DNA from: Ranitomeya imitator
Lineage: Eukaryota
Reading direction: 5' to 3'
DNA length: 64,000 bases
NCBI RefSeq assembly: GCF_032444005.1
Contig: NC_091291.1
Span: 120,652,001 to 120,716,000, forward strand
Position numbers and translations under genes: made by a program. Positions within the stretch are counted from its first letter, which is position 1. The number at the start of each line of letters is the position of its first letter. This document shows positions 36,106 through 60,939 of this stretch, in pieces. The notes below the pieces were generated by a model. That model saw only the letters and a program-made list of their open reading frames with translations. It made no database searches and was not told the origin of the DNA.

Positions 36106-37418
36106 GGCCGGCGTCACACTAGGGAGTTTTACGGACGTATGAGCGCATAAAATACGTCCGTAAAAATACGTCCTCATATGAACTCGAGCCTGGGAGCTTT
36201 CTAGGAAAGTTCCCACGCTCCAGGAACAGCCAGCAGATGGCGCCTCACCGCAAATGAAGGTAAATATAGGTCATTGACCTACTTTACCTTCATTCTCCGG
36301 GGTTTTGCAGCCAGGAGCAGCGCTGCATTAGCAGAGCTCATGGCTGCAAAATATTTTAACACCTTCCGATGGATTTACATCGTGGGACGTTACAGATCTT
36401 CAGAAGGTATGTATATTGTTGGTTTATTTGTTACAGAGCGAGGGTCTTCAGAAGGATTGAGCGAAGAATAAATTACTACAACAACCTTTGTTTTTATTTC
36501 ATTAAAATAATTTTTAATAATGTGTTTGTGTTTTTTTTAACCCTTTACTAGTATTGGATTAATGATGGATAGGTGTCATAATTGACGCCTCTCCATTATT
36601 AATTTGGCTTAATGTCACCTTACAATAGCAAGGTGACATTAACCCTTCAGTACCCCATATCCCACCGCTACACAGGAATGGGAAGAGAGTGGCCAAGTGC
36701 CAGAATAGGCGCATTTTCTAGATGTGCCTTTTCTGGGGTGGCTGGGGGCAGGTGTTTTTAGCCAGGGGGGGGGGGGGCGCAATAACCGTGGACCCTCTCC
36801 AGGCTATTAATATCTGCCCTCAGTCACTGGCTTTACTACTCTGGCGGAGAAAAATGCGCAGGAGCCCACACCAATTTTTTCCGCCATTTAACCCTTTAAT
36901 TTAATAGCTAGAACGGCCAAATTTTGCATATACACACTACTAACATTAGTAGTGTGGAATATGCAAAAAAAAAAAATGGGGATATGAGATGGTTTACTGT
37001 ATGTAAACCATGTCTCATATCATGTCGGGTTTAGGAAGGAGATAGCAAAAGCCGGCAATTGAATTACCGGCTTTAAAGNNNNNNNNNNNNNNNNNNNNNN
37101 NNNNNNNNNNNNNNNNNNNNNNNNNNNNNNNNNNNNNNNNNNNNNNNNNNNNNNNNNNNNNNNNNNNNNNNNNNNNNNNNNNNNNNNNNNNNNNNNNNNN
37201 NNNNNNNNNNTGTATAGCCGTATGTCGGTTTTGCAAGCCTGCGAGAAAAACACGCAGTACGGATGCCATGCGGATTACATACGGAGGATGCCATGCGCAA
37301 AAAACGCTGAAACACCCTGCCTACGGAGGAGCTACGGACCACTATTTTGGGGACTTTTCAGCGTATTACGGCCGTAATATACGGACCGTATTGTCTTACG
37401 CTGAGTGTGACTCCAGCC
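36106..37418. mobile_element. TWA-target (PIF/Harbinger-like) MITE containing an assembly gap
   Basis: TTA|GGCCGGCGTCACACT...AGTGTGACTCCAGCC|TTA. Confidence 0.8.
37079..37210. other. Assembly gap (N run)
   Basis: 132 Ns. Confidence 1.
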
Positions 37419-38740: not shown

Positions 38741-38970
38741 CTAGATTAAAAAAAAAAAAAAAAAAAAGGAGAAAAAAGGAAACATAAAATATACCAGCAA
38801 TACTAAATATATCCATAAATTGCTTTCTTCTTGGTGGAGGGCAAAGCACGTTCATCCTGGGCCTCCTGTTTCAGATGGCTGTGTGCATGTTACTGCAGGT
38901 GAGAGCGCGGTGCACGATACAGGTTCTCTTTTCCTGATTCTTAGGACCCTGGTGTCATGCACCGTCTTAC

Positions 38971-39098
38971 CTGTAGCAATGTTGCCGCTGCTCCACCGAT
39001 CAGCAGCAGGGGGGACTCCGCCATCTGAGCATTTTTAACAGCAGTCACAGTATTGGTTAATCCTGGACCGGCTGTCACTGCTGCCACACCGACCGTAC
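38971..39098 (-). CDS. ILVBL: ILVBL coding exon 3
   Basis: (G)[42 protein letters not shown]|GTAAG; 128 bp. Confidence 0.95.
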
Positions 39099-40016
39099 CT
39101 GCACCGAAATAACGTGCGTTACTATAATTCGTGAGGGGGGCCCACAACCATTACGCAGTACAAGGATCACCTTGCAATATTTTACCCCTGCCATGGTCAT
39201 CAATGATCCCAATAAGGCTAGGATCATTCCAGCCTTAGACATTCCCAGTGCAGGGCACAAATGTCTGATAGGTTCCACTTTTAGGCCATTCATGCGTACC
39301 GTAATCGGTTACACGGCACAATCCATGCCGTTAAACGGCAGTGGATCAGCTGAAGACAAGCCAATGGACGGTCTTTTGCTGGGTCTGTATAGGCAGGCTG
39401 ACGACCATTCTATACCCACAGAACGATTGTTAATACGATCGATCGTTCTGTGCACATAGGATGTCATAATACTCTGCAGAACTTCCTGTTTACACATGAC
39501 ATAGGGTATACGTGAGTTCCGTGACCTGGAAAAAATTACCCCAACCCCCTTAAACAGATCTCTTAACAATCTAAAGAATAAACTTCTAACGTACTCAAAA
39601 CAGCAGACGGAGACATATGTTGGATTTAATTGGCCACAGCAGCCATTTTATTAAATAAAAGATAACAGAACTTTTATGACAACCCAGAATAGGAGGGGCG
39701 GTCCTCGAAGCCCCAAAGTTATAAAAAACTCAGTATCCCAAAAACTCCACAATGTTCAGCCCAGGATGAGTCTTACCCCCAGCCGTAAAGCACCAGCTCA
39801 GGGATAGATAACAACCAATCCTGGTCCACCGAACCCACCCCCATGCCAGGGGTCCATAAATCCACCTCACGCGGAATAACCGTACCGCGCCTTGTTAAAT
39901 TCTCTCATGGGGTGTCCAGGACCTCTCAAGATCCCCACCCCATTGAACCACGATTTACCATTTCCACCAACTTCGAGGACCTCCACCCCCGCCACGAACA
40001 CGAATGGCCTGACACC

Positions 40017-40601
40017 TTAGCCATTCATGTCCCTCCACACCTTCAAGCTTAATTCAATGCCACTACGGATAGCCAAACACCACATATCATTACCCACCGC
40101 GTTCAGGTGCACGCCATCAGCTCTCCAGTAAGCTCCTTGACCCGATTCCAAGTCCACATGTCTCACGGCCAACGCGCCATTCCTCACCATAAACCGAGAT
40201 ATGGCCCTGTTTATTTTAATCCGGGCCCTGTTCACCCCCTCGTGTGATCTAGCACCTCTCCATCTTTTACGGGGAATGATGTCGGACCACACCAACAACA
40301 CTTTTGGAAACATGACCCAGAACCTCAGGATATCGAATTTGATATCCTCAATCAGCTCCCTACAAGACCGTTTAGCCAAATCATTCCCCCCTGAATGTAT
40401 CACCACGATCTCCGGCACTCTATCCAGTCTAACAAAACGATGAAATTCAGGTAACCATTCCTTCCACACCATCCCCCTTTTACCGATCCATCGTAAAGTC
40501 ACTGTCTCTCGAGAAAGACCCAACTGACGACCGTCCGGACGAACCGCAGCACGCAACGCAGCCCATACAACATACGAATGCCCCATGATCCAGACGAGCA
40601 T
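40017..40601 (-). CDS. SGNH/GDSL-family hydrolase (esterase) of the Ngaro-like element, intact
   Basis: Block I GHSY, block II G, block III GGND, block V DGVH; 194 aa with no stops. Confidence 0.88.
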   Translation of the reverse strand: MLVWIMGHSYVVWAALRAAVRPDGRQLGLSRETVTLRWIGKRGMVWKEWLPEFHRFVRLDRVPEIVVIHSGGNDLAKRSCRELIEDIKFDILRFWVMFPKVLLVWSDIIPRKRWRGARSHEGVNRARIKINRAISRFMVRNGALAVRHVDLESGQGAYWRADGVHLNAVGNDMWCLAIRSGIELSLKVWRDMNG

Positions 40602-41079
40602 CGGATCAGGCCCTGCAACACAGAAAGAAAGGCAACAAACAATTAACTTAACACAGCTTCTAACTCACAATAGGTTTGGGCGAACATACGACTGGAATCT
40701 TGAAGATTCCCACCTCCCAATTCTCCGAACCACATCCTCGCCAAGGCCCCACCTAGCGGCCTCAGTCGCTGCCCCGATCCTGAAGGAGTGACCACTATAT
40801 TGTGTTGCAGGTAAGCCCGCTGCCGCCAAACATTTCCTAAAAACAGAAATGAACTGAAAACGGGACAAGAAAGACCCATTTTCGTGCACCAAGAATGGCT
40901 CGTCTAACACCCCGCCTTTTGCCATGTACTTCTTCACGGATGCCACCGGGCACACCGGGGATCCTTCAACATTGAACAACACCACTTTGCACCCTTTCCC
41001 ATACACGTCCGTTTTGGAAGCCTTAATAAACACTACCACCTTATTCCCTTCGACATCCACGTTTTCTCTTAACAAAATA

Positions 41080-43353
41080 CCGTATATACTCGAGTATAAG
41101 CCGACCCGAGTATAAGCCGACCCCCCTAATTTTGCCACAAAAAACTGGGAAAACTTATTGACTCGAGTATAAGCCTAGGGTGGAAATGCAGCATTTACCG
41201 GTGAATTTCAAAAATAAAAATAGATCATTATTTCCCCATAGCTGTGCCATATAGTGCTCTGCACCGTTCATATTTCCCCATAGGTGTGAACCATATAGTG
41301 CTCTGCACCGTTCATTGTGCCCCCTAGCTGTGCCATATACGGTGCTCTGCACCGTTCATTGTGCCCCATAGATGTGCCATATACGGTGCTCTGCACCGTT
41401 CACTGTGCCCCATAGCTGTGCCATATACGGTGCTCTGCACCGTTCACTGTGCCCCATAGCTGTGCTGTGCCATATACGGTGCTCTGCACCGTTCACTGTG
41501 CCCCATAGCTGTGCCATATACGGTGCTCTGCACCGTTCACTGTGCCCCATAGCTGTGCTGTGCCATATACGGTGCTCTGCACCGTTCACTGTGCCCCATA
41601 CATAGCTGTGCTGTGCCATATACGGTGCTCTGCACCGTTCACTGTGCCCTATAGCTGTGCTGTGCCATATACGGTGCTCTGCACCGTTCACTGTGCCCCA
41701 TAGCTGTGCTGTGCCATATACGGTGCTCTGCACCGTTCACTGTGCCCCATAGCTGTGCTGTGCCATATACGGTGCTCTGCACCGTTCACTGCGCCCCATA
41801 GCTGCGCTGTGCCATATACGGTGCTCTGCACCGTTCACTGTGCCCCATAGCTGTGCTGTGCCATATACGGTGCTCTGCACCGTTCACTGTGCCCCATACA
41901 TAGCTGTGCTGTGCCATATACGGTGCTCTGCACCGTTCACTGTGCCCTATAGCTGTGCTGTGCCATATACGGTGCTCTGCACCGTTCACTGTGCCCCATA
42001 GCTGTGCTGTGCCATATACGGTGCTCTGCACCGTTCACTGTGCCCCATAGCTGTGCTGTGCCATATACGGTGCTCTGCACCGTTCACTGCGCCCCATAGC
42101 TGCGCTGTGCCATATACGGTGCTCTGCACCGTTCACTGCGCCCCATAGCTGCGCTGTGCCATATACGGTGCTCTGCACCGTTCACTGTGCCCCATAGCTG
42201 TGCTGTGCCATATACGGTGCTCTGCACCGTTCACTGTGCCCCATAGCTGTGCTGTGCCATATACGGTGCTCTGCACCGTTCACTGTGCCCCATAGCTGTG
42301 CTGTGCCATATACGGTGCTCTGCACCGTTCACTGTGCCCCATAGCTGTGCTGTGCCATATACGGTGCTCTGCACCGTTCACTGTGCCCCATACATAGCTG
42401 TGCTGTGCCATATACGGTGCTCTGCACCGTTCACTGTGCCCTATAGCTGTGCTGTGCCATATACGGTGCTCTGCACCGTTCACTGTGCCCCATAGCTGTG
42501 CTGTGCCATATACGGTGCTCTGCACCGTTCACTGTGCCCCATAGCTGTGCTGTGCCATATACGGTGCTCTGCACCGTTCACTGTGCCCCATAGCTGTGCT
42601 GTGCCATATACGGTGCTCTGCACCGTTCACTGTGCCCCATAGCTGTGCTGTGCCATATACGGTGCTCTGCACCGTTCACTGTGCCCCATAGATGTTCCAC
42701 ATAAATTTGTGCCGCCGCTGCCGCAATAAAGAAAAAAAAACACATACTCGCCTCCCTTGATTGCAGCTCCCGGCGTCTCGTTCCGGCGCCTCCATCTTCC
42801 CGGCGTCTCTGCTCTGACTGATCAGGCAGAGGGCGCCGCGCACACTGTATGCGTCATCGCGCCCTCTGCCTGAACAGTCAGAGAGCAGAGACGCCGGGAA
42901 GATGGAGGCGCCGGCCGGGAAGATGGATCGGCGCCCGGCGGCTGGAACGAGGACAGGTGAATATGCGATACTTACCTAGTCCTGGCGATCCTCGCGCTGT
43001 CCCTCTGCCTGGTCTTCGGTGCCGCAGCTTCTTTCTCTATCAGCGGTCACCGGCACCGCTGATTAGAGAAATGAATAAGCGGCTCCGCCCCTATGGGAGG
43101 TGGAGCCGCTTATTCATTTCTGTAATGAGCGGTCCCACGTGACCGCTGAAGAGAGGAAGAAACTGCAGCGCCGAAGCCCGTGGGACGGCAGGGACAGCGC
43201 GAGGATCGCTGGGACTAGGTAAGTATACCTCAGCGCCCTCACCCCCTCACCCGCCGACCCCACCGCTACCGTGACTCGAGTATAAGCCGAGGGGGGCACT
43301 TTCAGCCCAAAAATTTGGGCTGAAAATCTCGGCTTATACTCGAGTATATACGG
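41080..43353. mobile_element. Tc2/pogo-like non-autonomous TA-target element inserted in the YR gene
   Basis: TIR CCGTATATACTCGAGTATAAGCCGA at both ends; TA TSD at 41078-79 and 43354-55. Confidence 0.9.
41240..42700. repeat. Minisatellite, ~49-bp unit (44/49/53-bp variants), about 30 copies
   Basis: CTGTGCCATATACGGTGCTCTGCACCGTTCACTGTGCCCCATAGCTGTG repeated head-to-tail with no spacers. Confidence 0.95.
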
Positions 43354-43813
43354 TACCTTTTTTACTAACGGACGGGCTAACCAACTCACCTAACCGAAAT
43401 GCCCCAAAGAAGGCCAAAGAAAAGGCTGCACAGAACAGAACCACTTCCCATTCGGAAAAACACACCTCTTGCAACTTCCGCTCAATGGCTGAGAGCACCT
43501 CATAAGATACGGGTCGGCGACCGTCCGAAGCCTTCCAGCCTTTCTTCCAACCCCGAACAACTTGCTGAACCAAGAAGGATTTCGTTATATCCTTACCCCC
43601 CCTCCATTTAAAGGTTGAAGGCTAGCCCCGCCAGAAACTTATTCAAACGTGTCACTGACCAACCTGCCTCCCAATGATGACCTAAGAATAACAACAAACC
43701 ATACTCCTCCTCCATATCCTGGTCCATACTTGACATCCAGGATTCCCACAAGCTCCAAGCCTGATTATAATGAGACCAAGATGAATCCGCGAGCGATTTG
43801 GTAAATAACTCTG

Positions 43814-45400
43814 TTACGGCCCTCGCGGCAGGTTCCACAACTCCACTGGACAATCCCGGCCCGCGCTCTCCGCCTGTGGTGCCAAATCCCGGAAAAGCTG
43901 CCACTGAAATTGAGAAAGAGCAACAACTATTAGATCAGGCGCTGACAAGCTAACTTCAGATACAATCCATAAGTTAAACTTAAGACCCAGGAAAACCAAG
44001 TGCTGCAAGACCTTCACTACTGCAGGCGTAGCCGCTGACAACGAGTTTACCGCCGTCACCGTTCCAACATGCTCACAATGAAAAGAAATCTTCAAATTCC
44101 TCAATTTGTCACCCCACAGGGCCAACGCAACTACCCTGGGGAACAAATGCAACAGTAGCCGGTTGTTTGTTAACCCCTCCTCCTTCCATTCTTCCGGCCA
44201 AGCCGCTGCTGACCAGCTACCATGAAAGAAAAGACCAAAGCCACTCATTTCAACGACATGCACCAAAATGCCCAAGGAGGTAGCATCTGCCACCGGCTGA
44301 ATCCACAGAGATCTGCCATTGTACTCGTCCAGAAAATCCGCCCACATCTTCAAATCGTCCCGAAACTCTTTCTTTATCCTGATGAAATGCAAAGGGGACT
44401 TTACCCCTACTGTTGCCAAGGATAGGCGGCGGCAGAACGCTCGACCCATCGGCATGATCCTACATGCAAAGTTCAGTTTCCCTAACAACGATTGCAAACT
44501 GCGCAAATTTATCTTCTTCAAACCAATCGTATTAACCACATCTTGGCGCAACGCGGTAACCTTGTCTGCAGGTAGCCTACATTCCATTGCTACCGTGTCG
44601 ATTTCAATGCCTAGGAAGCTCAACACTGTCACCGGACCAACTGTTTTATCCTCCGCCAAAGGCACCCCGAAGTTTTTTGTCACACTCTCCATTGTATGCA
44701 ACAAAATCGAACAATCTGCTGATTCCGCTGGCCCTATAAACAGAAAGTCATCCAGATAGTGCGAACATGAGCGTATCCCAGACACATCTTTCACCACCCA
44801 TTCTAGGAACGTGCTGAAGGCCTCAAAGTAAGCACATGAAATCGAGCAACCCATGGGAAGACAACGATCAACAAAGAAGCCGCCATCCCAAAAACAACCC
44901 AATAAATGCAAACTGTCAGGATGAACTGGCAACAAACGAAAGGCCGCTTCGATGTCGGTCTTAGCCAGCTTAGCCCCCTTTCCACATGCTCTAACCCACT
45001 CCATCGCTGAATCGAATGATAAGTACGACACCGAACTCAACTCGGGATCAATACCATCATTAACCGAAGATCCCTTCGGAAATGACAGGTGATGGATTAA
45101 CCTAAATTTATTAGGTTCTTTCTTAGGGACCACGCCAAGAGGTGACACCCTCAGATTTGCAATCGGAGGGGCGACAAACGGGCCTGCCATTCTTCCCAGA
45201 GCAACTTCCTTATTCAACTTCTCCGACACGACCTCCGGGAATTGTAACGCCGATTTCAAATTTTTTCTTTTTAAACTAACATCCTGCTCAACATAAGGGA
45301 TTTTGAAACCCTCCTTAAAACCGTCGCGCAATAAAACTGCAGCTGACCTATCAGGGTATCTACTTAGAAAGGCCTCCATCACGACCCACTGCACCGGAGT
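43814..45400 (-). CDS. Reverse transcriptase-RNase H of the Ngaro-like element (open frame 45535-43814)
   Basis: SPLGVVPKK..FRLIHHLS, KTDIEAAFR, LPMGCSISC, HYLDDFLF; RNase H-like C-terminus overlapping the YR start. Confidence 0.9.
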   Translation of the reverse strand, partial: TPVQWVVMEAFLSRYPDRSAAVLLRDGFKEGFKIPYVEQDVSLKRKNLKSALQFPEVVSEKLNKEVALGRMAGPFVAPPIANLRVSPLGVVPKKEPNKFRLIHHLSFPKGSSVNDGIDPELSSVSYLSFDSAMEWVRACGKGAKLAKTDIEAAFRLLPVHPDSLHLLGCFWDGGFFVDRCLPMGCSISCAYFEAFSTFLEWVVKDVSGIRSCSHYLDDFLFIGPAESADCSILLHTMESVTKNFGVPLAEDKTVGPVTVLSFLGIEIDTVAMECRLPADKVTALRQDVVNTIGLKKINLRSLQSLLGKLNFACRIMPMGRAFCRRLSLATVGVKSPLHFIRIKKEFRDDLKMWADFLDEYNGRSLWIQPVADATSLGILVHVVEMSGFGLFFHGSWSAAAWPEEWKEEGLTNNRLLLHLFPRVVALALWGDKLRNLKISFHCEHVGTVTAVNSLSAATPAVVKVLQHLVFLGLKFNLWIVSEVSLSAPDLIVVALSQFQWQLFRDLAPQAESAGRDCPVELWNLPRGP

Positions 45401-47480
45401 CACCCCTTTTGTCAGCTGAATCTCCAACTTTTTGCCTGTTACCCCTGAAACATTTTGAAGCGCTATGCACCCCCCCGCAGGTTGAACACTCGTGCCTATA
45501 TTTACACTTGCTCCCGAATCTGCATATGCCATCATTGAAGGCGAAACACAGTCCCTTCTGCAAAGCCGCCGAGTGTCCTGACTGCCCTGAACTCCCGGCG
45601 CCCCCGTGAAAAGGCTGGCTAGTCTGACCTAAACGGGACGGGACCATAACTCTCATCCACAACGCTATGTCCTTGTGATCCCACCTGATACTTGGCCTAA
45701 AAGCCTTACGCTGACGAAACTGTTCGTCATAGCGTAACCAACCCTGTCCCCCATAGGTCCTGTAAGCCTCCCCTATGGCATCTAAGTAACAAAATAATGC
45801 CGAGCAATTTTCCGGGGCCTTCTCCCCGATTACGCTAGCCATAATAGCGAAAGCTTGCAGCCAATTTGAAAATGATCTGGGAATCAGCCTATATCTCCGT
45901 TTCTCCTCATCTTCTTTTTTAGAGTCCTCCCTTCTAGGTCTATCCAAATTAAATCTCTCTAGGGGTAAAAGAGAAAATATTTCTATGTACTCCCCTTTCC
46001 AGATTTTTTCCCTAACCTCTTGTTTTAAATGTGCCCCTAACGGGCCCTCGAAGCAGACATAGACCTCCCCCCTAGCCGCATCGTCTAGTTGCGGTACATC
46101 CTCCTTTTCCTTATCCTGCAAAGCTCCCTCACCTGGTGCATCAATTCCTGACCCAGGCCCTGGTGCTGTTCCGTCCTTCTCCCTTGATGAGCTCCCCGTG
46201 TCTGCCGCAGGACCCGCACTGCTGGATGTACCCGTAACTTCAGACAACTGTCTAGACCCCTCAAACGACCCCGTATTTCCCAACCAAGCAGCTGACGGCA
46301 AAGACCCCCTGCTAAGACCGGACCCCCACAAGCCCGCTAGCTCCCCTAAACCTCTAAGGATTAAACCCATACCCCCGCTAGCAACTCCCGAAGTAATGTC
46401 ACTATTCCTAGCTTCAGGGGAAACTATGCCTGGCAAATTAAAGATAGGGAAAATGTTCTCACCTAGCTGCCTGGGTGCTGTGAGCCCAGCAGCCGAAGAT
46501 CCAGCTCCCAGCCGAAGGTGTCCTGCATCCCAACCGGCTTGATCCGCGATGTTGCCCGCCGAACTCCTGGCGGCCGTATCCGTGTCCTGGCGACTCGGTG
46601 ATGCCGTCGACTGCCCTGGTGCTGCGGAAAGGGAAAAGGCCGAGCCAGCATCCTGCCGCCCGATGGAAGATGTGCGGCTCCTTGCCACGGATACGTCCCC
46701 GGCACTGCGTACCGAAGCGACGGAATGTCGCCTGCCGGAATCCGGAAAATTTCCGCCACCACCAGCAGAGGACGCAGATCCAGGAAAGTTCCGGCCATCA
46801 CCAGCAGAGGGCGCAGATCCAGGAAAATCCCGGCCATCACCAGCAGAGGGCGCAGCTGCAGGAAAATCCCGGCCAACACCAGCAGAGGGCGCAGAACTTG
46901 CAATATCCAGGCCACCACCAGCAGAGGGCGCTGCTGCGTTGAAGACTCCAGAGCTGTGCACTGCAGAAGGCCGCACGCTGATGCCAGGGCCAGCCGACTG
47001 CCGCCCGCATAATCCTCGGCGCTGAGGGGCCACCGCACCTGACCCCCGTCTCCTCGGCTGTCGCTGCCTCCCACGCTGAGCGGCGCCAGCGGGCATGCTG
47101 GCGGCCGCCGTACCGGCTCCTGCTCCTGCCGCCCCACGTCGCCCGGACACTGAAGGAGGGGAGGAAGGATCCACCCCCCGTTGTAGGCCCCGCCGCACTG
47201 GAGGATTCCTCCCGGCGCCGCGCTGTGAGGTGGAGGGAACAGCGCTGCTTACCGGAGGGTCCGCAGAGGGGCTCCTATTTCGGCGCCGGGCCCTGGGGAT
47301 GATGTCCGGGCTTAGGCGCGCCGGAGGCCTAGTCCTCCGCGGCCGGCGCCCGTCCTGCGGTGCCTGCGATGGTGCTCCCGATGTCCCCTGGAGAAGGCTG
47401 TTAACGGATGCATTCAGCCAATCTGTCCCCTGGGAGCTGGCTGCCGTCCGGAGACGCTGGAGGATCGCTTCAACGTCCAT
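45360..47480 (-). CDS. ORF1 (Gag-like) of the Ngaro-like element, 706 aa, intact
   Basis: Low-complexity N-half with 13-aa repeats; C-terminal WLRYDEQFR and CFAFNDGICRFGSKCKYRH-ECSTCGGVHSASKC zinc-finger-like motifs. Confidence 0.85.
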   Translation of the reverse strand: MDVEAILQRLRTAASSQGTDWLNASVNSLLQGTSGAPSQAPQDGRRPRRTRPPARLSPDIIPRARRRNRSPSADPPVSSAVPSTSQRGAGRNPPVRRGLQRGVDPSSPPSVSGRRGAAGAGAGTAAASMPAGAAQRGRQRQPRRRGSGAVAPQRRGLCGRQSAGPGISVRPSAVHSSGVFNAAAPSAGGGLDIASSAPSAGVGRDFPAAAPSAGDGRDFPGSAPSAGDGRNFPGSASSAGGGGNFPDSGRRHSVASVRSAGDVSVARSRTSSIGRQDAGSAFSLSAAPGQSTASPSRQDTDTAARSSAGNIADQAGWDAGHLRLGAGSSAAGLTAPRQLGENIFPIFNLPGIVSPEARNSDITSGVASGGMGLILRGLGELAGLWGSGLSRGSLPSAAWLGNTGSFEGSRQLSEVTGTSSSAGPAADTGSSSREKDGTAPGPGSGIDAPGEGALQDKEKEDVPQLDDAARGEVYVCFEGPLGAHLKQEVREKIWKGEYIEIFSLLPLERFNLDRPRREDSKKEDEEKRRYRLIPRSFSNWLQAFAIMASVIGEKAPENCSALFCYLDAIGEAYRTYGGQGWLRYDEQFRQRKAFRPSIRWDHKDIALWMRVMVPSRLGQTSQPFHGGAGSSGQSGHSAALQKGLCFAFNDGICRFGSKCKYRHECSTCGGVHSASKCFRGNRQKVGDSADKRGDSGAVGRDGGLSK

Positions 47481-48170
47481 TCTGGTAAGTGTGACAGAGA
47501 TTCCTCACTTGTCACGCAGGCACCTAAAATGGATGCCTGCGTGAGGAGCGTGCCCCTTTTTATGTGCCCCCTCCCCACAGTCCCCTAGTTCCACCCCTTA
47601 TTTTCAAAAAATGCCCCTAAAGCCACCCCTCAAGTTCCCAGTTAACCCCTTACCACCGTATCCCTTCTAACTGCTCCAGCTCCCCAGGTCCCACGTAACC
47701 CCGTCATGGCGGCCTCCCTTTACGTGCCGTGGGCCCCCAGTACGGCCTTTCTGGATAATGTGCTGCCGAGAATGCTGATTTTCTTTTTCTTAAAAATAAT
47801 TCCAGCCAACGTCCATACATTCCAATCATTCATCTGGTGATCAGCAGCCTGTTTAATGTGTCCGATAGTCAGGAACAACTTAAGCTCGTTTTAAGATTAT
47901 TGTTTCATCTAAATAGGCCATAAGTCTGAAGACAGAAGCATCTTTCCAAACCATCGACACACGTGACCCCATGATGCTACACAGAACAGGGATTGCAACT
48001 CATCCCTCCCAAAGTAATACCACACATAGCCTGAAGACAGGTGAGGCACTGTTTCAGGAAGAAAGCAAAGATTTGTCTAAACACAGATGGAAGATGGAAG
48101 GAGAGGTATGTTATACAGAGTCATCACTCTTATTATTTTATATCCACATTAATAATGGAGATTTTCCTAC

Positions 48171-48372
48171 CGGAGAGTCTGGCTACTGCATCTGCAGCAA
48201 ATACCGCCGTGGCCTCGTGTCTCGTGTCAACCACCCGTATTCCCAACTTTTCACTTGCAACCAAGATGGGCGAGATATGGCCACCAACTAGGGTGAATAA
48301 AAATTTAACACCATGGGATTGAAGCACTTCAGCCACCAACTCTCCTCCATGACAGGGACTTTGAGTTTCCAC
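48171..48372 (-). CDS. ILVBL: ILVBL coding exon 2 (catalytic Glu in TRHE)
   Basis: ATAG|GTG: [17 protein letters not shown]...[20 protein letters not shown]|GTAGG; 202 bp. Confidence 0.95.
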
Positions 48373-49149
48373 CTATGAATACAATAAATTTAGATGTATT
48401 TAGGGTCAGACGGATCAGCTTTGATACAGCGCATTACATAAAGCTAACAGAGTTCCTGGAAGAAATACACAGGAACACTGATCTGTAACTGCAATATGTT
48501 CAGAAAAAGATGGTGGTATAAGATAGGGGAGCATATTGAACTCCTGTGGCCCCATAGCAAACATCCGAATTGTGAACAGACTTCAGGCACTAGATGGCAA
48601 CAAGCCCCTTCACCCAACTCAAGGAGCCCATAGCGTTCGTGTAGGTCACCATATGTGGTATAGGAAATTCATATGATATGAGACTTGGGTGACCAGAGTC
48701 TAAAACCTCCTTTAAATGCAAGGTGTAACCTTGCTGCCTGTCCAAAGCAACAGCCGATACATGACAAAAAAAAGTTGTGATTTTCCTCAGGTTATTTGAT
48801 TGGCATTTTTCTAGAACATTGAAGCGTAAGAAGGAGATTGAGGCTGAACATACATGTCCATTGTTTAATTCTCTCCCCTTACTCCCCAGTAAAGTCAGGC
48901 CTTGTCATCTTCCATGTTCCTAGGAACGTGGGATAAGACAGTTCCCAAAGGGATTCTATCACATTTTTTTGGTCCTTTGACTGCACTTTTTAGTAACTAA
49001 GCGTTCCAGCTTGGGGTGGACTCTGATCGCTCTCTAGGCTGGAACGGCTCAGAGGATTTTCACCTGTACCACATCCTGAAAGATTCTCCACTCTTTTCTT
49101 TCTATTCCTAAGGAGGGCCAACCCTGAGACTCCTCTCTCATGGCCAACT

Positions 49150-59191: not shown

Positions 59192-59387
59192 TCAGATATG
59201 ATCCAATGCCATTATCGCAGCGGCGTAGTCGTACATCTTTCTGTAGCCAACATTTAACTCTTCAGGGTACGGTAAGAATTCTTGTACATGTTTGACCACG
59301 CACGCGGGGATCAGCTTGTACTTGCGAAAGTTCAGAAAGCCGTGGGCCCAGACTACAAAGGTTCTATAGGACGTCCGCCTTAGCTTG
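59192..59387 (-). CDS. Last exon of a stand-alone P2X7-ballast/KolX-like protein
   Basis: TTGCAG|C AAG: (H)KLRRTSYRTFVVWAHGFLNFRKYKLIPACVVKHVQEFLPYPEELNVGY..*, resembling P2X7 LRHCAYRCYATW...LPSCCRWRIRKEFP...YSGF. Confidence 0.8.
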
Positions 59388-59536
59388 CTGCAAGAAAGCA
59401 AAAAAAATAATAAAAAGACAGATTAGAAACTAAACTTTCAACACTAAAGGAATAAGTAATGGTTTTTTAACCTCTTTTATGGACCAACATTGGTTAACCG
59501 TTTGGCCTTTTATTCAATTGTATAGGTAAAATCCGG

Positions 59537-59690
59537 NNNNNNNNNNNNNNNNNNNNNNNNNNNNNNNNNNNNNNNNNNNNNNNNNNNNNNNNNNNNNNNN
59601 NNNNNNNNNNNNNNNNNNNNNNNNNNNNNNNNNNNNNNNNNNNNNNNNNNNNNNNNNNNNNNNNNNNNNNNNNNNNNNNNNNNNNNNNNN
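59537..59690. other. Assembly gap (N run)
   Basis: 154 Ns, inside the intron of the ballast-like gene. Confidence 1.
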
Positions 59691-60041
59691 CAGACTATAG
59701 GCATTACAGATGAAAAATCGTCTTTATTTTTTTCTGGTCAAAAACCAAGCTATTTTGCATTCTCTGGATCTGGCCTAAAGCTCACGACATGCTATGCAAT
59801 ATTCCACCGTAGATAGGCTAATAACTTTCTTAAATAATTGTTGCATACTCTTAAGCTGTTAGAAGTATTTAGTTTGTATTGGTTTTGTGCTTTTTATTTT
59901 AAAGCAAAAGAAGTATGAGTTAATTTACTAATGGCAAGTAAAGACCTCGAAAATTAAGGAATTTACACATAAGTGTGTCACAAAACTAGAATTAAATATT
60001 GCAGCAAAAACCTATATGGCGATAACGTAACTAATACTTAC

Positions 60042-60397
60042 TGAAGATAATACAGAACATCATTTTTTCTCTTAATTTTGCCTAAGAAACGATAAAGGAA
60101 ATCAAGACGGTCCTTGTCTAAACACATCTCCTGAAAGGATGGATGCTTCGTGATACACAGGCGCTCTTTGTTAAGCTGCGGGAGAAGTACGGAAATCTCG
60201 TGGCAACATATGGACTCTTCCAAGGTAGACATGACGCAGCAGTGGCCACATTTACACCAACTGGTGTTTCTTATATCACGTCTGATATCCGGGATTGCGG
60301 GAAGTTCTTCCTTTACTCCTTGATGGTTTGTAGGATCGAACATAAAATTGGCCTGTGCTTGAGATGGTTTTTCCATGCCTTCCAGGACCCGGATACG
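60042..60397 (-). CDS. Middle exon of the P2X7-ballast/KolX-like protein (Cys-rich Zn-binding region)
   Basis: TTCACAG|CGT...WCKCGHCCVMSTLEESICCHEI...CITKHPSFQEMCLD...YYL CA|GTAAGT; 356 bp, phase 0 to 2. Confidence 0.85.
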
Positions 60398-60858
60398 CTG
60401 TGAAAAAATAAAAATTTGAATATATAACTCTATATACGGAGTGGTTTTTTTTTCTGCACCAAAACCAAGAATAGTGGCAAGAAGAACTTGGCTCAGGTTC
60501 ATTTTAATGAGTGAAAAGCACTGCAAAAAAAAACAAAAAAAAAAAACATTGAAAGGATTAATATACTGCATCTTGGCAAAAACGTAGCAGGAATCAAAAT
60601 ACGGGGGAGGATAAAAAAAAAAAAAACTGTGTGCATGAGATTTCAGAAATCATCTAATTAATTTTTAATTAGTGGGGGTCTGTCACCCACCACCCCCATT
60701 ACATTGCAGTGTGTCCTACTAATCATCAGAGGCACTGGGGATGCTGGCGGGTAGTAGGAGGTTCACCGGGCTCTGGTCTGGGGGCCACATACTACCACCG
60801 TGGCTTCTGGACCAGGGTCCTGCAAATCTTATACAGCTATTTCCAAACTTTCACCTAC

Positions 60859-60939
60859 CCTGGCTTCTCTTTCTCGTAAACTCAGAATATCACCATGAAC
60901 TTGTGGACCAAATTTCCTCTTCTTTGCTTCCGTTTCCAG
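60859..60939 (-). CDS. Upstream internal exon of the P2X7-ballast/KolX-like gene (5' part lies beyond the DIRS, outside the window)
   Basis: CCTTTTTAG|CTG: LETEAKKRKFGPQVHGDILSLREREAR|GTAGGT; 81 bp, phase 0-0, in frame with the next exon. Confidence 0.6.

What the first reader, a model, noticed from the sequence alone, without database searches (positions are those of the whole stretch)
40017..47480. Predicted spliced ORF1-SGNH esterase fusion in a Ngaro-like YR retrotransposon
Seen: the hydrolase ORF is preceded by a complete 3' splice site (branch-like TTAAT, then GCCTTTCTTTCTGTGTTGCAG|GG CCT GAT CCG ATG; exon starts 40612, phase 1). ORF1 carries a strong donor, GCAGCTAG|GTGAGA (exon ends 46463), that falls after the first base of codon 340, also phase 1. 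Joining them gives ORF1(1-339)-Gly-Pro-Asp-Pro-SGNH, 537 aa in frame, removing the ORF1 zinc fingers, RT/RH and YR. Known: some vertebrate Ngaro elements carry an SGNH ORF, and some CR1/L2 ORF1 proteins are esterase fusions. Inference: alternative splicing yields two ORF1 isoforms, nucleic-acid-binding and esterase-bearing, which would explain how a distal fourth ORF is translated. I do not know of this being described but could not search.
Basis: partly seen in the sequence, partly recalled or inferred. Interest (0 to 1): 0.8.

Follow-up and report, generated by a model that had tools for sequence, protein, structure and literature searches.

The report
Frog Ngaro retrotransposon splices gag to esterase
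A poison-frog jumping gene of the Ngaro type carries conserved splice signals that should join the front of its gag-like gene in frame to a distant esterase gene (and probably to its recombinase gene), which would explain how these start-codon-less genes get made; I could not get the RNA reads needed to prove it in this species.

Summary
On the minus strand, ORF1 (47480-45360) has an AG|GTGAGA donor with its exon ending at 46463, phase 1. A pyrimidine tract plus CAG|GG acceptor at 40612, also phase 1, lies 3 codons before the SGNH domain. Joining them gives an open 537-aa ORF1(1-339)-G-PDP-SGNH.

The in-window signals alone are only suggestive; comparison is what supports the reading.
- Full-length Ngaro loci from Engystomops, Dendropsophus, Eleutherodactylus, Xenopus tropicalis and Spea have a phase-1 donor at the homologous ORF1 Gly codon. 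It reads G|GTGAG in all but Xenopus, which has G|GTACG.
- They also have a phase-1 acceptor 3-8 codons before the catalytic GHS.
- RefSeq and GenBank models in about 20 anuran species encode this ORF1N-SGNH fusion.
- In the three intact Engystomops and Dendropsophus elements the first in-frame ATG falls after the catalytic serine. In Xenopus it sits one residue before GHS.

New here:
- A second conserved phase-1 acceptor (TTTCAG|TGG, 43903) opens the equally ATG-less recombinase ORF.
- This copy is defective: a 1-nt indel and a 2.3-kb MITE with a satellite interrupt the recombinase.
- A second, family-specific phase-1 donor lies at 46133.

No junction reads were obtained. Only contigs were available, and the satellite blocked laying reads across the intron. 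Other first-stage readers proposed the same programme elsewhere in this genome. The papers I could search do not describe it.

The parts
47556..47564 (-). TATA-like CATAAAAAG about 80 nt upstream of the ORF1 ATG. Putative promoter element; inference only.
   Evidence: Read from the sequence. Contigs of four runs break at about 47484-47497.
45360..47480 (-). ORF1, gag-like, 706 aa. It has a conserved N-terminal domain of about 35 aa followed by an RRxRPPxRLSP motif, a long low-complexity linker with 39-nt repeats, a conserved central domain (..YVCFEGPLGAHLK..) and a C-terminal CCCH zinc finger.
   Evidence: The AlphaFold model of the Bufo homologue P0015 shows an N-terminal helical hairpin at residues 2-36, then disorder.
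46463..47480 (-). Proposed exon 1 coding part: ORF1 codons 1-339 plus the first base of Gly340.
46457..46466 (-). Conserved 5' splice site TAG|GTGAGA, with the exon ending at 46463 in phase 1. It splits a Gly codon; the unspliced ORF1 reads Gly-Glu here.
   Evidence: GGTGAG is the only invariant block in the alignment of six loci. It lies 99-135 aa upstream of VCFEGPLG in the window, L003 and L005.
46127..46136 (-). Second, family-specific phase-1 donor CAG|GTGAGG, with the exon ending at 46133. It would give a 647-aa fusion.
   Evidence: A Ranitomeya imitator gene model, P0005, uses it. L003, L005 and L006 have no counterpart.
43814..45535 (-). RT/RNase H ORF, 573 aa. It has its own conserved ATG, overlaps the end of ORF1, and lies inside the proposed intron.
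43901..43928 (-). Conserved 3' splice site GTTGTTGCTCTTTCTCAATTTCAG|TGG at the start of the recombinase ORF. The exon would start at 43903, in phase 1 and in frame with the ORF1 donor.
   Evidence: X. tropicalis and Spea gene models use the same site. Bufo bufo P0204 is an ORF1N-recombinase fusion.
43356..43904 (-). Tyrosine recombinase ORF, N-terminal part. There is no ATG before the conserved domain. In this copy the frame is shifted by a 1-nt indel near 43610.
   Evidence: tblastn frames change from -2 to -3. All four runs' contigs lack one base at 43610 (table 4).
41078..43355 (.). Nested MITE-like insertion of 2278 bp. It has 27-nt perfect terminal inverted repeats, TA flanks and an internal 44/49-nt satellite (41247-42700). 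It interrupts the recombinase and lies inside the proposed intron.
   Evidence: The 5.2-kb family contigs leave the window sequence exactly at 43354/43355 (table 8).
40665..41077 (-). Tyrosine recombinase C-terminal part, ending ..RFQSYVRPNLL with a TGA stop at 40667-40665.
40611..40652 (-). 3' splice site in front of the SGNH domain: branch-like TTAAT, the tract TTGCCTTTCTTTCTGTGTTG, then CAG|GG. The exon starts at 40612 in phase 1.
40017..40601 (-). SGNH/GDSL hydrolase ORF, 194 aa. The catalytic motifs are intact: GHS at residue 7, GGND at 71, DGVH at 162.
   Evidence: The fold of the homologous domain matches SGNH esterases, including the ZfL2-1 ORF1p esterase 4c1b.
39647..39652 (-). AATAAA about 365 nt downstream of the SGNH stop. 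Possible poly(A) signal and 3' region of the element; the boundary is not defined.
   Evidence: Read from the sequence. No split direct repeats were found.

Best explanation
The region from about 47.7 kb to 39.6 kb (minus strand) is a young Ngaro-type tyrosine-recombinase retrotransposon of a Ranitomeya genome. Its recombinase is broken by a 1-nt indel and a nested MITE.

The family's genomic RNA encodes ORF1 (gag-like) and RT/RNase H, each with its own ATG. I propose that part of the transcripts are spliced from one conserved phase-1 donor inside ORF1 (46463). The splice goes to a phase-1 acceptor directly in front of the SGNH esterase domain (40612). This removes the ORF1 central domain and zinc finger, the RT/RH and the recombinase.

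The intron is 5850 nt in this copy and about 3.57 kb in copies without the MITE. The resulting subgenomic mRNA starts at the ORF1 ATG. It encodes a 537-aa protein made of the ORF1 N-terminal helical module, a disordered linker and the SGNH esterase.

The same donor is also in frame with a conserved acceptor at the recombinase ORF (43903). Splicing therefore probably plays the role that frameshifting plays for Gag-Pol: it tags the distal, ATG-less enzymes with the gag N-terminus.

What is shown: the sites, their phases, their conservation, the missing ATGs, and gene models encoding the fusions. What is inferred: that the junctions are used in vivo in this family; that the shared N-terminal module brings the esterase and recombinase into the ORF1 particle; and that the esterase acts on lipids or membranes as proposed for the L2 ORF1p esterase.
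For: 1. Exact sites, phases and an open 537-aa product.

2. Donor conservation. GGTGAG is the only invariant block across six aligned ORF1 regions whose flanks are otherwise variable. All are phase 1. In L003 and L004 it is the only GTRAG in the whole ORF1. In X. tropicalis the donor is G|GTACG in phase 1, and in Spea it is G|GTGAGT in phase 1.

3. SGNH acceptor. A pyrimidine tract plus AG in phase 1 lies 3-8 codons before GHS in the window, L001, L003, L004, L006, L007, L008 and L009.

4. Intron content. Introns of 3551, 3521 and 3608 nt hold the ORF1 C-terminal half and the RT. The recombinase was also mapped in L006.

5. Start codons. The first in-frame Met of the SGNH frame is at +46 in L003 and L004 and at +98 in L006, which is after the catalytic Ser. 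In X. tropicalis it is at +8, one residue before GHS.

6. Architecture in databases. 44 of the fetched SGNH relatives, nearly all from the 150 best 50%-identity cluster representatives, carry the ORF1 N-terminal domain at their N-terminus with SGNH at the C-terminus. Only the chimeric model P0005 and P0029 matched the ORF1 C-terminal part.

7. Sources of the fusions. They are RefSeq or GenBank models from Bufo, Hyla, Hyperolius, Rana, Engystomops, Eleutherodactylus, Dendropsophus, Anomaloglossus, Ranitomeya variabilis, Phyllobates, Pyxicephalus, Spea and Xenopus. Many are numbered isoforms. Gene spans of 4.9-5.1 kb for 445-503 aa products fit this.

8. Recombinase acceptor. TTTCAG|TGG in phase 1 is invariant in five loci. 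Xenopus and Spea models use it, and Bufo bufo P0204 is an ORF1N-recombinase fusion.

9. Structure. A model of the Bufo fusion P0015 has an N-terminal helical hairpin, a disordered stretch of about 260 aa and a confident SGNH fold.
Against: - No junction read or contig was seen for this species. The runs are kept only as contigs and their RNA status is a guess. They show the unspliced 5.2-kb form. No joint or loose end at 46463 or 46133 was among those listed, and 117 loose ends were not shown.
- Gene models choose GT-AG sites with compatible phases by construction, and homology-guided annotation can copy a model from one species to the next. The 'isoform' labels imply transcript support, but I could not inspect that support.
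- This family has an in-frame ATG at +3 of the SGNH exon and a fair 5'UTR donor (47509), so a stand-alone esterase mRNA is possible here.
- A stronger-scoring second donor (46133) exists.
- Ranitomeya imitator's own annotation joins the acceptor to various donors. That shows predictors like the acceptor, not that it is used.
- No split direct repeats were found in this copy.
Confidence: 0.78

Rival explanations
1. An env-like subgenomic mRNA. The acceptor at 40612 is real, but in this family it is joined to a donor in the 5' leader (for example CAA|GTGAGG at 47509). The esterase is then translated alone, as 194 aa, from its own ATG at 40601.
For: There is an in-frame ATG 3 codons after the acceptor. 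A fair donor at 47509 lies upstream of the ORF1 ATG and downstream of a TATA-like box. Another first-stage reader proposed an env-like mRNA elsewhere in this genome (unchecked).
Against: The ATG is not conserved. Relatives have A, L, P, C or I at that position, and the intact Engystomops and Dendropsophus elements have no ATG before the catalytic Ser. The exact phase match between the ORF1 donor and the acceptor, conserved across families, would have no purpose for a leader splice. All database models start at the ORF1 ATG.
Confidence: 0.1
2. The fusion is the same, but it is made from the other donor. In this family the splice goes from 46133 (CAG|GTGAGG) to 40612, giving a 647-aa ORF1(1-449)-SGNH protein. 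Alternatively, both donors are used.
For: 46133 has the highest crude donor score in the element and is phase 1. The product is open. A Ranitomeya imitator gene model, P0005, uses it.
Against: L003, L005 and L006 have no homologous GTRAG. The junction in Bufo and in other Ranitomeya families follows the ..AAG.TAP..xG motif, which corresponds to 46463. P0005 is a chimeric model whose N-terminus is read in the wrong frame.
Confidence: 0.07
3. There is no functional splicing. The consensus-like sites are chance, and the database fusions are artefacts of gene predictors run on unmasked transposons. The esterase would be made by readthrough of the recombinase stop, by reinitiation, or not at all.
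For: In this window the recombinase TGA and the SGNH ORF are in the same frame, 18 codons apart. The in-window site strengths are not unique. No junction evidence was obtained.
Against: The frame relation between the recombinase and SGNH is not conserved: it is the same in the window and L003 but different in L004 and L006. The spacer is a pyrimidine tract. Nucleotide-level invariance of GGTGAG and TTTCAG|TGG amid variable flanks, together with constant phase 1 in lineages as far apart as Xenopus, Spea and neobatrachians, is not expected by chance.
Confidence: 0.05

Closest known systems
Amphibian Ngaro-like elements with a fourth SGNH ORF (Repbase DIRS-53_XT and DIRS-54_XT of Xenopus tropicalis; Goodwin and Poulter 2004 as cited in PMC9210276)
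   Same: The gene order is the same: gag-like ORF1, RT/RH, tyrosine recombinase, SGNH hydrolase. There is no methyltransferase. The host group is the same. The X. tropicalis locus L008 is homologous along its whole length.
   Different: The published description treats these as four overlapping ORFs whose hydrolase has 'no proven function', and says nothing about splicing. Here the distal ORFs are read as exons joined in frame to an ORF1 5' exon.
Esterase-type ORF1 proteins of CR1/L2 non-LTR retrotransposons (ZfL2-1 ORF1p, PDB 4c1b; PMC3905857)
   Same: The product would likewise be an N-terminal helical module followed by an SGNH esterase, made by a retrotransposon's first gene. The fold matches, and 4c1b has the highest sequence identity among the listed hits at 22-24%. 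A lipid or membrane role has been proposed for it.
   Different: In L2 and CR1 the esterase is contiguous within ORF1. Here it lies about 3.5 kb downstream and would be attached by splicing, alongside a second, zinc-finger isoform. The element class is different (tyrosine recombinase, not an endonuclease-bearing LINE).
Retroviral subgenomic env mRNA, especially avian leukosis/sarcoma virus, where the splice donor lies inside gag so that env uses the gag ATG and its first codons (my own knowledge, not checked here)
   Same: One donor in gag joins an acceptor before a distal ORF. The distal protein starts at the gag ATG.
   Different: Here 339 codons of gag, including a conserved domain, are carried over rather than six. 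The cargo is an enzyme, not an envelope protein. A second acceptor serves the recombinase.
Spliced mRNAs of LTR retrotransposons: copia and BARE gag mRNA (my own knowledge), and bdelloid Vesta elements with a GDSL ORF3 (PMC5408684)
   Same: Alternative splicing sets the protein output of a retrotransposon. The Vesta paper states that ORF3s of LTR retrotransposons are typically expressed from spliced messages, and it describes GDSL esterase ORF3s.
   Different: Those splices yield gag alone or a stand-alone ORF3. They are not in-frame gag-enzyme fusions, and none is in a tyrosine-recombinase element.

Membership tests
Ngaro-type tyrosine-recombinase retrotransposon (order DIRS) | Reverse transcriptase/RNase H ORF | tested here: met
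   RVT_1 at E 6e-8, above Pfam's cut-off. The ORF is 51-64% identical to the RT of other anuran Ngaro loci.
Ngaro-type tyrosine-recombinase retrotransposon (order DIRS) | Tyrosine recombinase instead of integrase or endonuclease | tested here: met
   Weak Phage_integrase match, E 1e-3, below the cut-off. tblastn to the recombinase ORFs of relatives gives 49-59% identity over 138 aa. The gene is broken in this copy.
Ngaro-type tyrosine-recombinase retrotransposon (order DIRS) | Split direct repeats A1 ... B1-A2-B2 | tested here: not met
   No direct repeats were found between 47400-48400 and 38800-40700, or within the 3' region. The ends of this copy are undefined or lost. Contig breaks at about 47485-47497 hint at a repeat boundary.
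Ngaro-type tyrosine-recombinase retrotransposon (order DIRS) | No methyltransferase domain; an SGNH ORF after the recombinase in amphibians | tested here: met
   No MT match in any ORF, and Lipase_GDSL_2 in the last ORF.
SGNH/GDSL hydrolase | Catalytic Ser (block I), Gly, Asn (block III) and Asp-x-x-His (block V) | tested here: met
   GHS at residue 7, GGND at 71, DGVH at 162. The Pfam match is only 24.3 bits against a cut-off of 32.9. There are 946 relatives at E<=1e-10.
SGNH/GDSL hydrolase | SGNH alpha/beta/alpha fold | tested here: met
   The AlphaFold model of the homologue P0015 (56% identical domain) has mostly pLDDT >90 over residues 301-496. Foldseek matches GDSL lipases, PAF-AH, sialate O-acetylesterases and 4c1b at E 1e-8 to 1e-6. 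The window protein itself was not folded.
Esterase-type ORF1p of CR1/L2 LINEs | Esterase encoded contiguously within ORF1 of a non-LTR element | tested here: not met
   The esterase is separated from ORF1 by RT and recombinase genes in a tyrosine-recombinase element. The product would be an analogue, not a member of this family.
Spliced subgenomic mRNA of a retroelement | Consensus donor and acceptor, in-frame, conserved among relatives | tested here: met
Spliced subgenomic mRNA of a retroelement | Junction observed in RNA | tested here: inconclusive
On 42850-47700 only contigs were available, and no joint at the donors was listed. Transcript support for the RefSeq isoforms could not be inspected.

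The most novel reading that the evidence does not exclude
Anuran Ngaro elements run a retrovirus-like splicing programme with one gag donor and at least two in-phase acceptors. Both ATG-less distal enzymes, the tyrosine recombinase and the SGNH esterase, would then be made as fusions to the gag N-terminal module, sometimes through in-frame cassette exons as in the Xenopus and Spea models. Splicing would do for tyrosine-recombinase retrotransposons what frameshifting does for Gag-Pol. It would also give them an L2-like esterase-bearing gag isoform.
Probability: 0.6. Interest if true: 0.75.

Novelty: new variant of a known kind. Interest (0 to 1): 0.66.

Why it matters
How DIRS/Ngaro elements express their overlapping ORFs, some of which lack an ATG, is unknown, and so is the purpose of the amphibian SGNH ORF. 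The only paper on anuran Ngaro elements that I could read calls the hydrolase of 'no proven function'.

A conserved splice design gives a concrete and quickly testable answer. It predicts two or three gag-N-terminal fusion proteins. It links tyrosine-recombinase elements to the esterase-type ORF1 proteins of L2 and CR1 LINEs by convergence. It also explains why genome annotations of about 20 frog species contain hundreds of odd 'uncharacterized protein isoform X3' entries. Finally, it matters for masking and annotating the very large, transposon-rich frog genomes.

Tried and rejected
It used contigs only, showed the unspliced 5.2-kb form, and listed no joint at either donor.
- Searches for contig-derived (Logan) fusion proteins found none. 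P0196 is a degenerate recombinase-SGNH read-through, and P0004 is a plain ORF1.
- I considered mini-introns between the recombinase and SGNH in the window: GTGAGT at 40668 (56 nt) and GTATGT at about 40690 (77 nt, used by model P0009). Both are phase 2 in the recombinase frame and run into a stop after the acceptor, so I rejected them.
- I considered stop-codon readthrough from the recombinase into SGNH. The two frames agree in the window and L003 but not in L004 or L006, so I rejected it as a general mechanism.
- I looked for a conserved acceptor in front of the RT ORF. There is none, and the RT has its own conserved ATG.
- Split direct repeats were not found. There is no other copy of the family in the window.
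- Complex prediction on two copies of the ORF1 N-terminal 60 aa gave no verdict. It is evidence neither for nor against self-association.
- phmmer of the SGNH ORF against PDB sequences gave nothing useful.
- Goodwin and Poulter 2004 and Poulter and Butler 2015 are not held in the library. I therefore could not rule out an earlier mention of splicing in those papers. Six further text searches found none.


Full report
**What is in the window**

The minus strand from about 47.7 kb to 39.6 kb carries one retroelement.
- ORF1 (47480-45360, 706 aa) ends in a CCCH zinc finger.
- An overlapping 573-aa ORF (45535-43814) has a reverse-transcriptase domain.
- Pieces of a tyrosine recombinase follow (43904-43356 and 41077-40665).
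- A 194-aa SGNH/GDSL hydrolase ORF (40601-40017) comes last.

ORF1 is 99% identical to a Ranitomeya imitator protein, so the genome is that species or a very close relative. This gene order is the one described for amphibian Ngaro-like elements, whose fourth ORF is said to have no proven function.

This copy is not intact.
- A 2278-bp insertion sits inside the recombinase at 41078-43355. It has 27-nt perfect terminal inverted repeats, TA flanks and an internal 44/49-nt satellite of about 30 units.
- The recombinase frame also shifts near 43610.
- In three of four sequencing runs from four studies, a 5.2-kb contig matches 47484-43354 with 5-7 differences. The fourth run covers the same stretch in shorter pieces. 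All four lack one base at 43610. The long contigs leave the window sequence exactly at the insertion border and run on for about 1.1-1.6 kb.

The family is therefore young, and copies without the insertion exist. I found no split direct repeats.

**Check of the observation**

- The donor GCAGCTAG|GTGAGA ends its exon at 46463. That is 1018 nt after the ATG, so phase 1.
- The acceptor TTGCCTTTCTTTCTGTGTTGCAG|GG starts its exon at 40612, also phase 1 relative to the ATG at 40601.
- The join is open and gives 537 aa with the junction ..TAPRQLG-PDP-MLVWIMGHSY.
- The catalytic motifs GHS, GGND and DGVH are intact.

Within the window alone this is only suggestive. With a crude matrix recalled from memory, the donor ranks 4th of 507 GT sites and the acceptor about 7th-13th of 588 AG sites. 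A still stronger phase-1 donor, CCAG|GTGAGG, lies at 46133. A random strong pair is phase-compatible one time in three.

**Comparative test**

The esterase ORF has 946 relatives at E<=1e-10 among 1.84 billion cluster representatives. In most of the best 150, the domain sits at the extreme C-terminus of a 300-750-aa protein.

A profile of the first ~110 ORF1 residues finds that domain at the N-terminus of 44 of the SGNH relatives fetched so far, nearly all from those 150. Only two of them (the chimeric model P0005, and P0029) matched the ORF1 C-terminal part in the single-sequence search.

Those I looked up are RefSeq or GenBank gene models. They come from Bufo gargarizans, B. bufo, Hyla sarda, Hyperolius, Rana temporaria, Engystomops, Eleutherodactylus, Dendropsophus, Anomaloglossus, Ranitomeya variabilis, Phyllobates, Pyxicephalus, Spea, Xenopus laevis and X. 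tropicalis. Many are named isoform X2 to X5.

In Bufo the fusion junctions read ..SAAAGITAPVVPG|F.. and ..PAAAGFTAPGQLG|G...

I fetched the DNA of seven such loci, together with a Logan contig (L005) that ends before the SGNH region.

*Engystomops (L003, L004) and Dendropsophus (L006).*
- The models have two exons.
- The donors are CAGCCTG|GTGAGT in phase 1.
- The acceptors are long pyrimidine tracts plus AG in phase 1.
- The introns of 3551, 3521 and 3608 nt hold the ORF1 C-terminal half and the RT; in L006 I also mapped the recombinase.

*Eleutherodactylus (L007) and a decayed Engystomops locus (L001).*
- Both show the same phases.

*Donor alignment.*
- In the alignment of the six donor regions, GGTGAG is the only invariant block.
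- The site lies 99-135 aa before the VCFEGPLG motif in the window, L003 and L005.
- In L003 and L004 it is the only GTRAG in the whole ORF1.
- The window's second donor at 46133 has no counterpart in the other loci.

*Start codons.*
- In the three intact elements the esterase frame has no ATG before the catalytic serine. The first Met is at +46 or +98.
- In X. tropicalis the first Met is one residue before GHS.
- The window's ATG at +3 is therefore particular to this family.
- The frame relation between the recombinase stop and the esterase varies between loci, which argues against readthrough.

**A wider programme**

The recombinase ORF also lacks a conserved ATG. In five loci from four families it opens with an invariant TCTC..TT.CAG|TGG, always in phase 1. 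In the window the exon would start at 43903, in frame with the ORF1 donor.
- Bufo bufo has an annotated ORF1N-recombinase fusion.
- The X. tropicalis GenBank model enters the recombinase through this acceptor and leaves after 84 nt. It then enters the esterase, with all junctions in phase 1.
- A Spea model joins the ORF1 N-terminus, the recombinase and the esterase.
- The RT ORF, by contrast, keeps its own ATG and has no conserved acceptor.

Other first-stage readers proposed the same one-donor, two-acceptor design on other pieces of this genome. Those notes are unchecked and do not count as independent evidence.

**Most likely mechanism**

The family's genomic RNA serves as mRNA for ORF1 and RT. 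I propose that a fraction is spliced from the ORF1 donor to the esterase acceptor, and probably also to the recombinase acceptor. Translation from the ORF1 ATG would then yield proteins that share the ORF1 N-terminus.

That N-terminal part is a conserved helical hairpin of about 35 aa, an RRxRPPxRLSP motif and a disordered linker. The esterase-bearing product resembles the L2 ORF1p esterase in layout and fold.

It is inference that the shared module recruits the enzymes into the ORF1 particle, and that the esterase acts on lipids. A self-association prediction gave no verdict.

**What is missing**

I have no direct junction evidence for this species.
- The satellite blocked laying reads across the intron.
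- Gene models are not reads, and homology-guided annotation can propagate a model between species.

What cannot be an annotation artefact is the nucleotide-level conservation of the sites, the constant phase and the missing start codons.

**Novelty**

The papers I could search describe the SGNH ORF but no splicing in tyrosine-recombinase retrotransposons. Two key subscription papers were not available.

I rate this a new variant of a known kind. The element type and its ORFs are known. The expression strategy is not described in anything I could read.

Noticed in passing
window 41078-43355: Nested MITE-like element of 2278 bp. It has 27-nt perfect terminal inverted repeats (TACCGTATATACTCGAGTATAAGCCGA), TA flanks and an internal 44/49-nt satellite (41247-42700, about 30 units). 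Contig depth over its ends is 20-70 times that of the Ngaro element in four runs, so it is a very abundant family.
   Followed up: partly
window 46744-46938: A 39-nt tandem repeat inside ORF1, with four overlapping 78-nt register copies reported. It encodes repeats of the type (A/S)PSAG(G/D)GR(D/N)FPG.
   Followed up: no
L008:5710-5793 (Xenopus tropicalis): The GenBank model KAE8630892.1 contains an 84-nt in-frame cassette exon made of the first 28 recombinase codons. It is entered through the conserved TTTCAG|TGG acceptor and left at CAG|GTATGA, before the SGNH exon. All three junctions are phase 1.
   Followed up: partly
L009 (Spea bombifrons), about 3339, 5828, 6748 and 6876: The RefSeq model P0057 is a triple fusion of the ORF1 N-terminus, the whole recombinase and SGNH. 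A 127-nt intron (ATTG|GTAGTT ... TTGCAG|GG) removes the recombinase C-terminal tail and stop. The window has no GT at the homologous place.
   Followed up: partly
P0173, P0174, P0206 (Aquarana catesbeiana, Lithobates pipiens): In a ranid family the annotated fusions keep two or three CCCH zinc fingers in front of the SGNH domain. The donor there must lie after the fingers, so the position of the donor differs between Ngaro lineages.
   Followed up: no
window 46133-46463 versus P0003 (Dendrobates tinctorius): The 330 nt (110 codons) between the two AGGTGAG repeats are absent from a D. tinctorius RefSeq model, which reads ..PRQPG-ESCQKDKEE... This is either an in-frame ORF1-internal intron (GT..CAG) or a deletion between the repeats. 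The segment is coding and conserved in other families.
   Followed up: partly
window 37079-37210 and 59537-59690: Two runs of N (132 and 154 bases). I left them as they are.
   Followed up: no
window 59192-60939: Another first-reader note on this window reports a stand-alone P2X7 'ballast'-like gene (s1-295039). I did not examine it.
   Followed up: no
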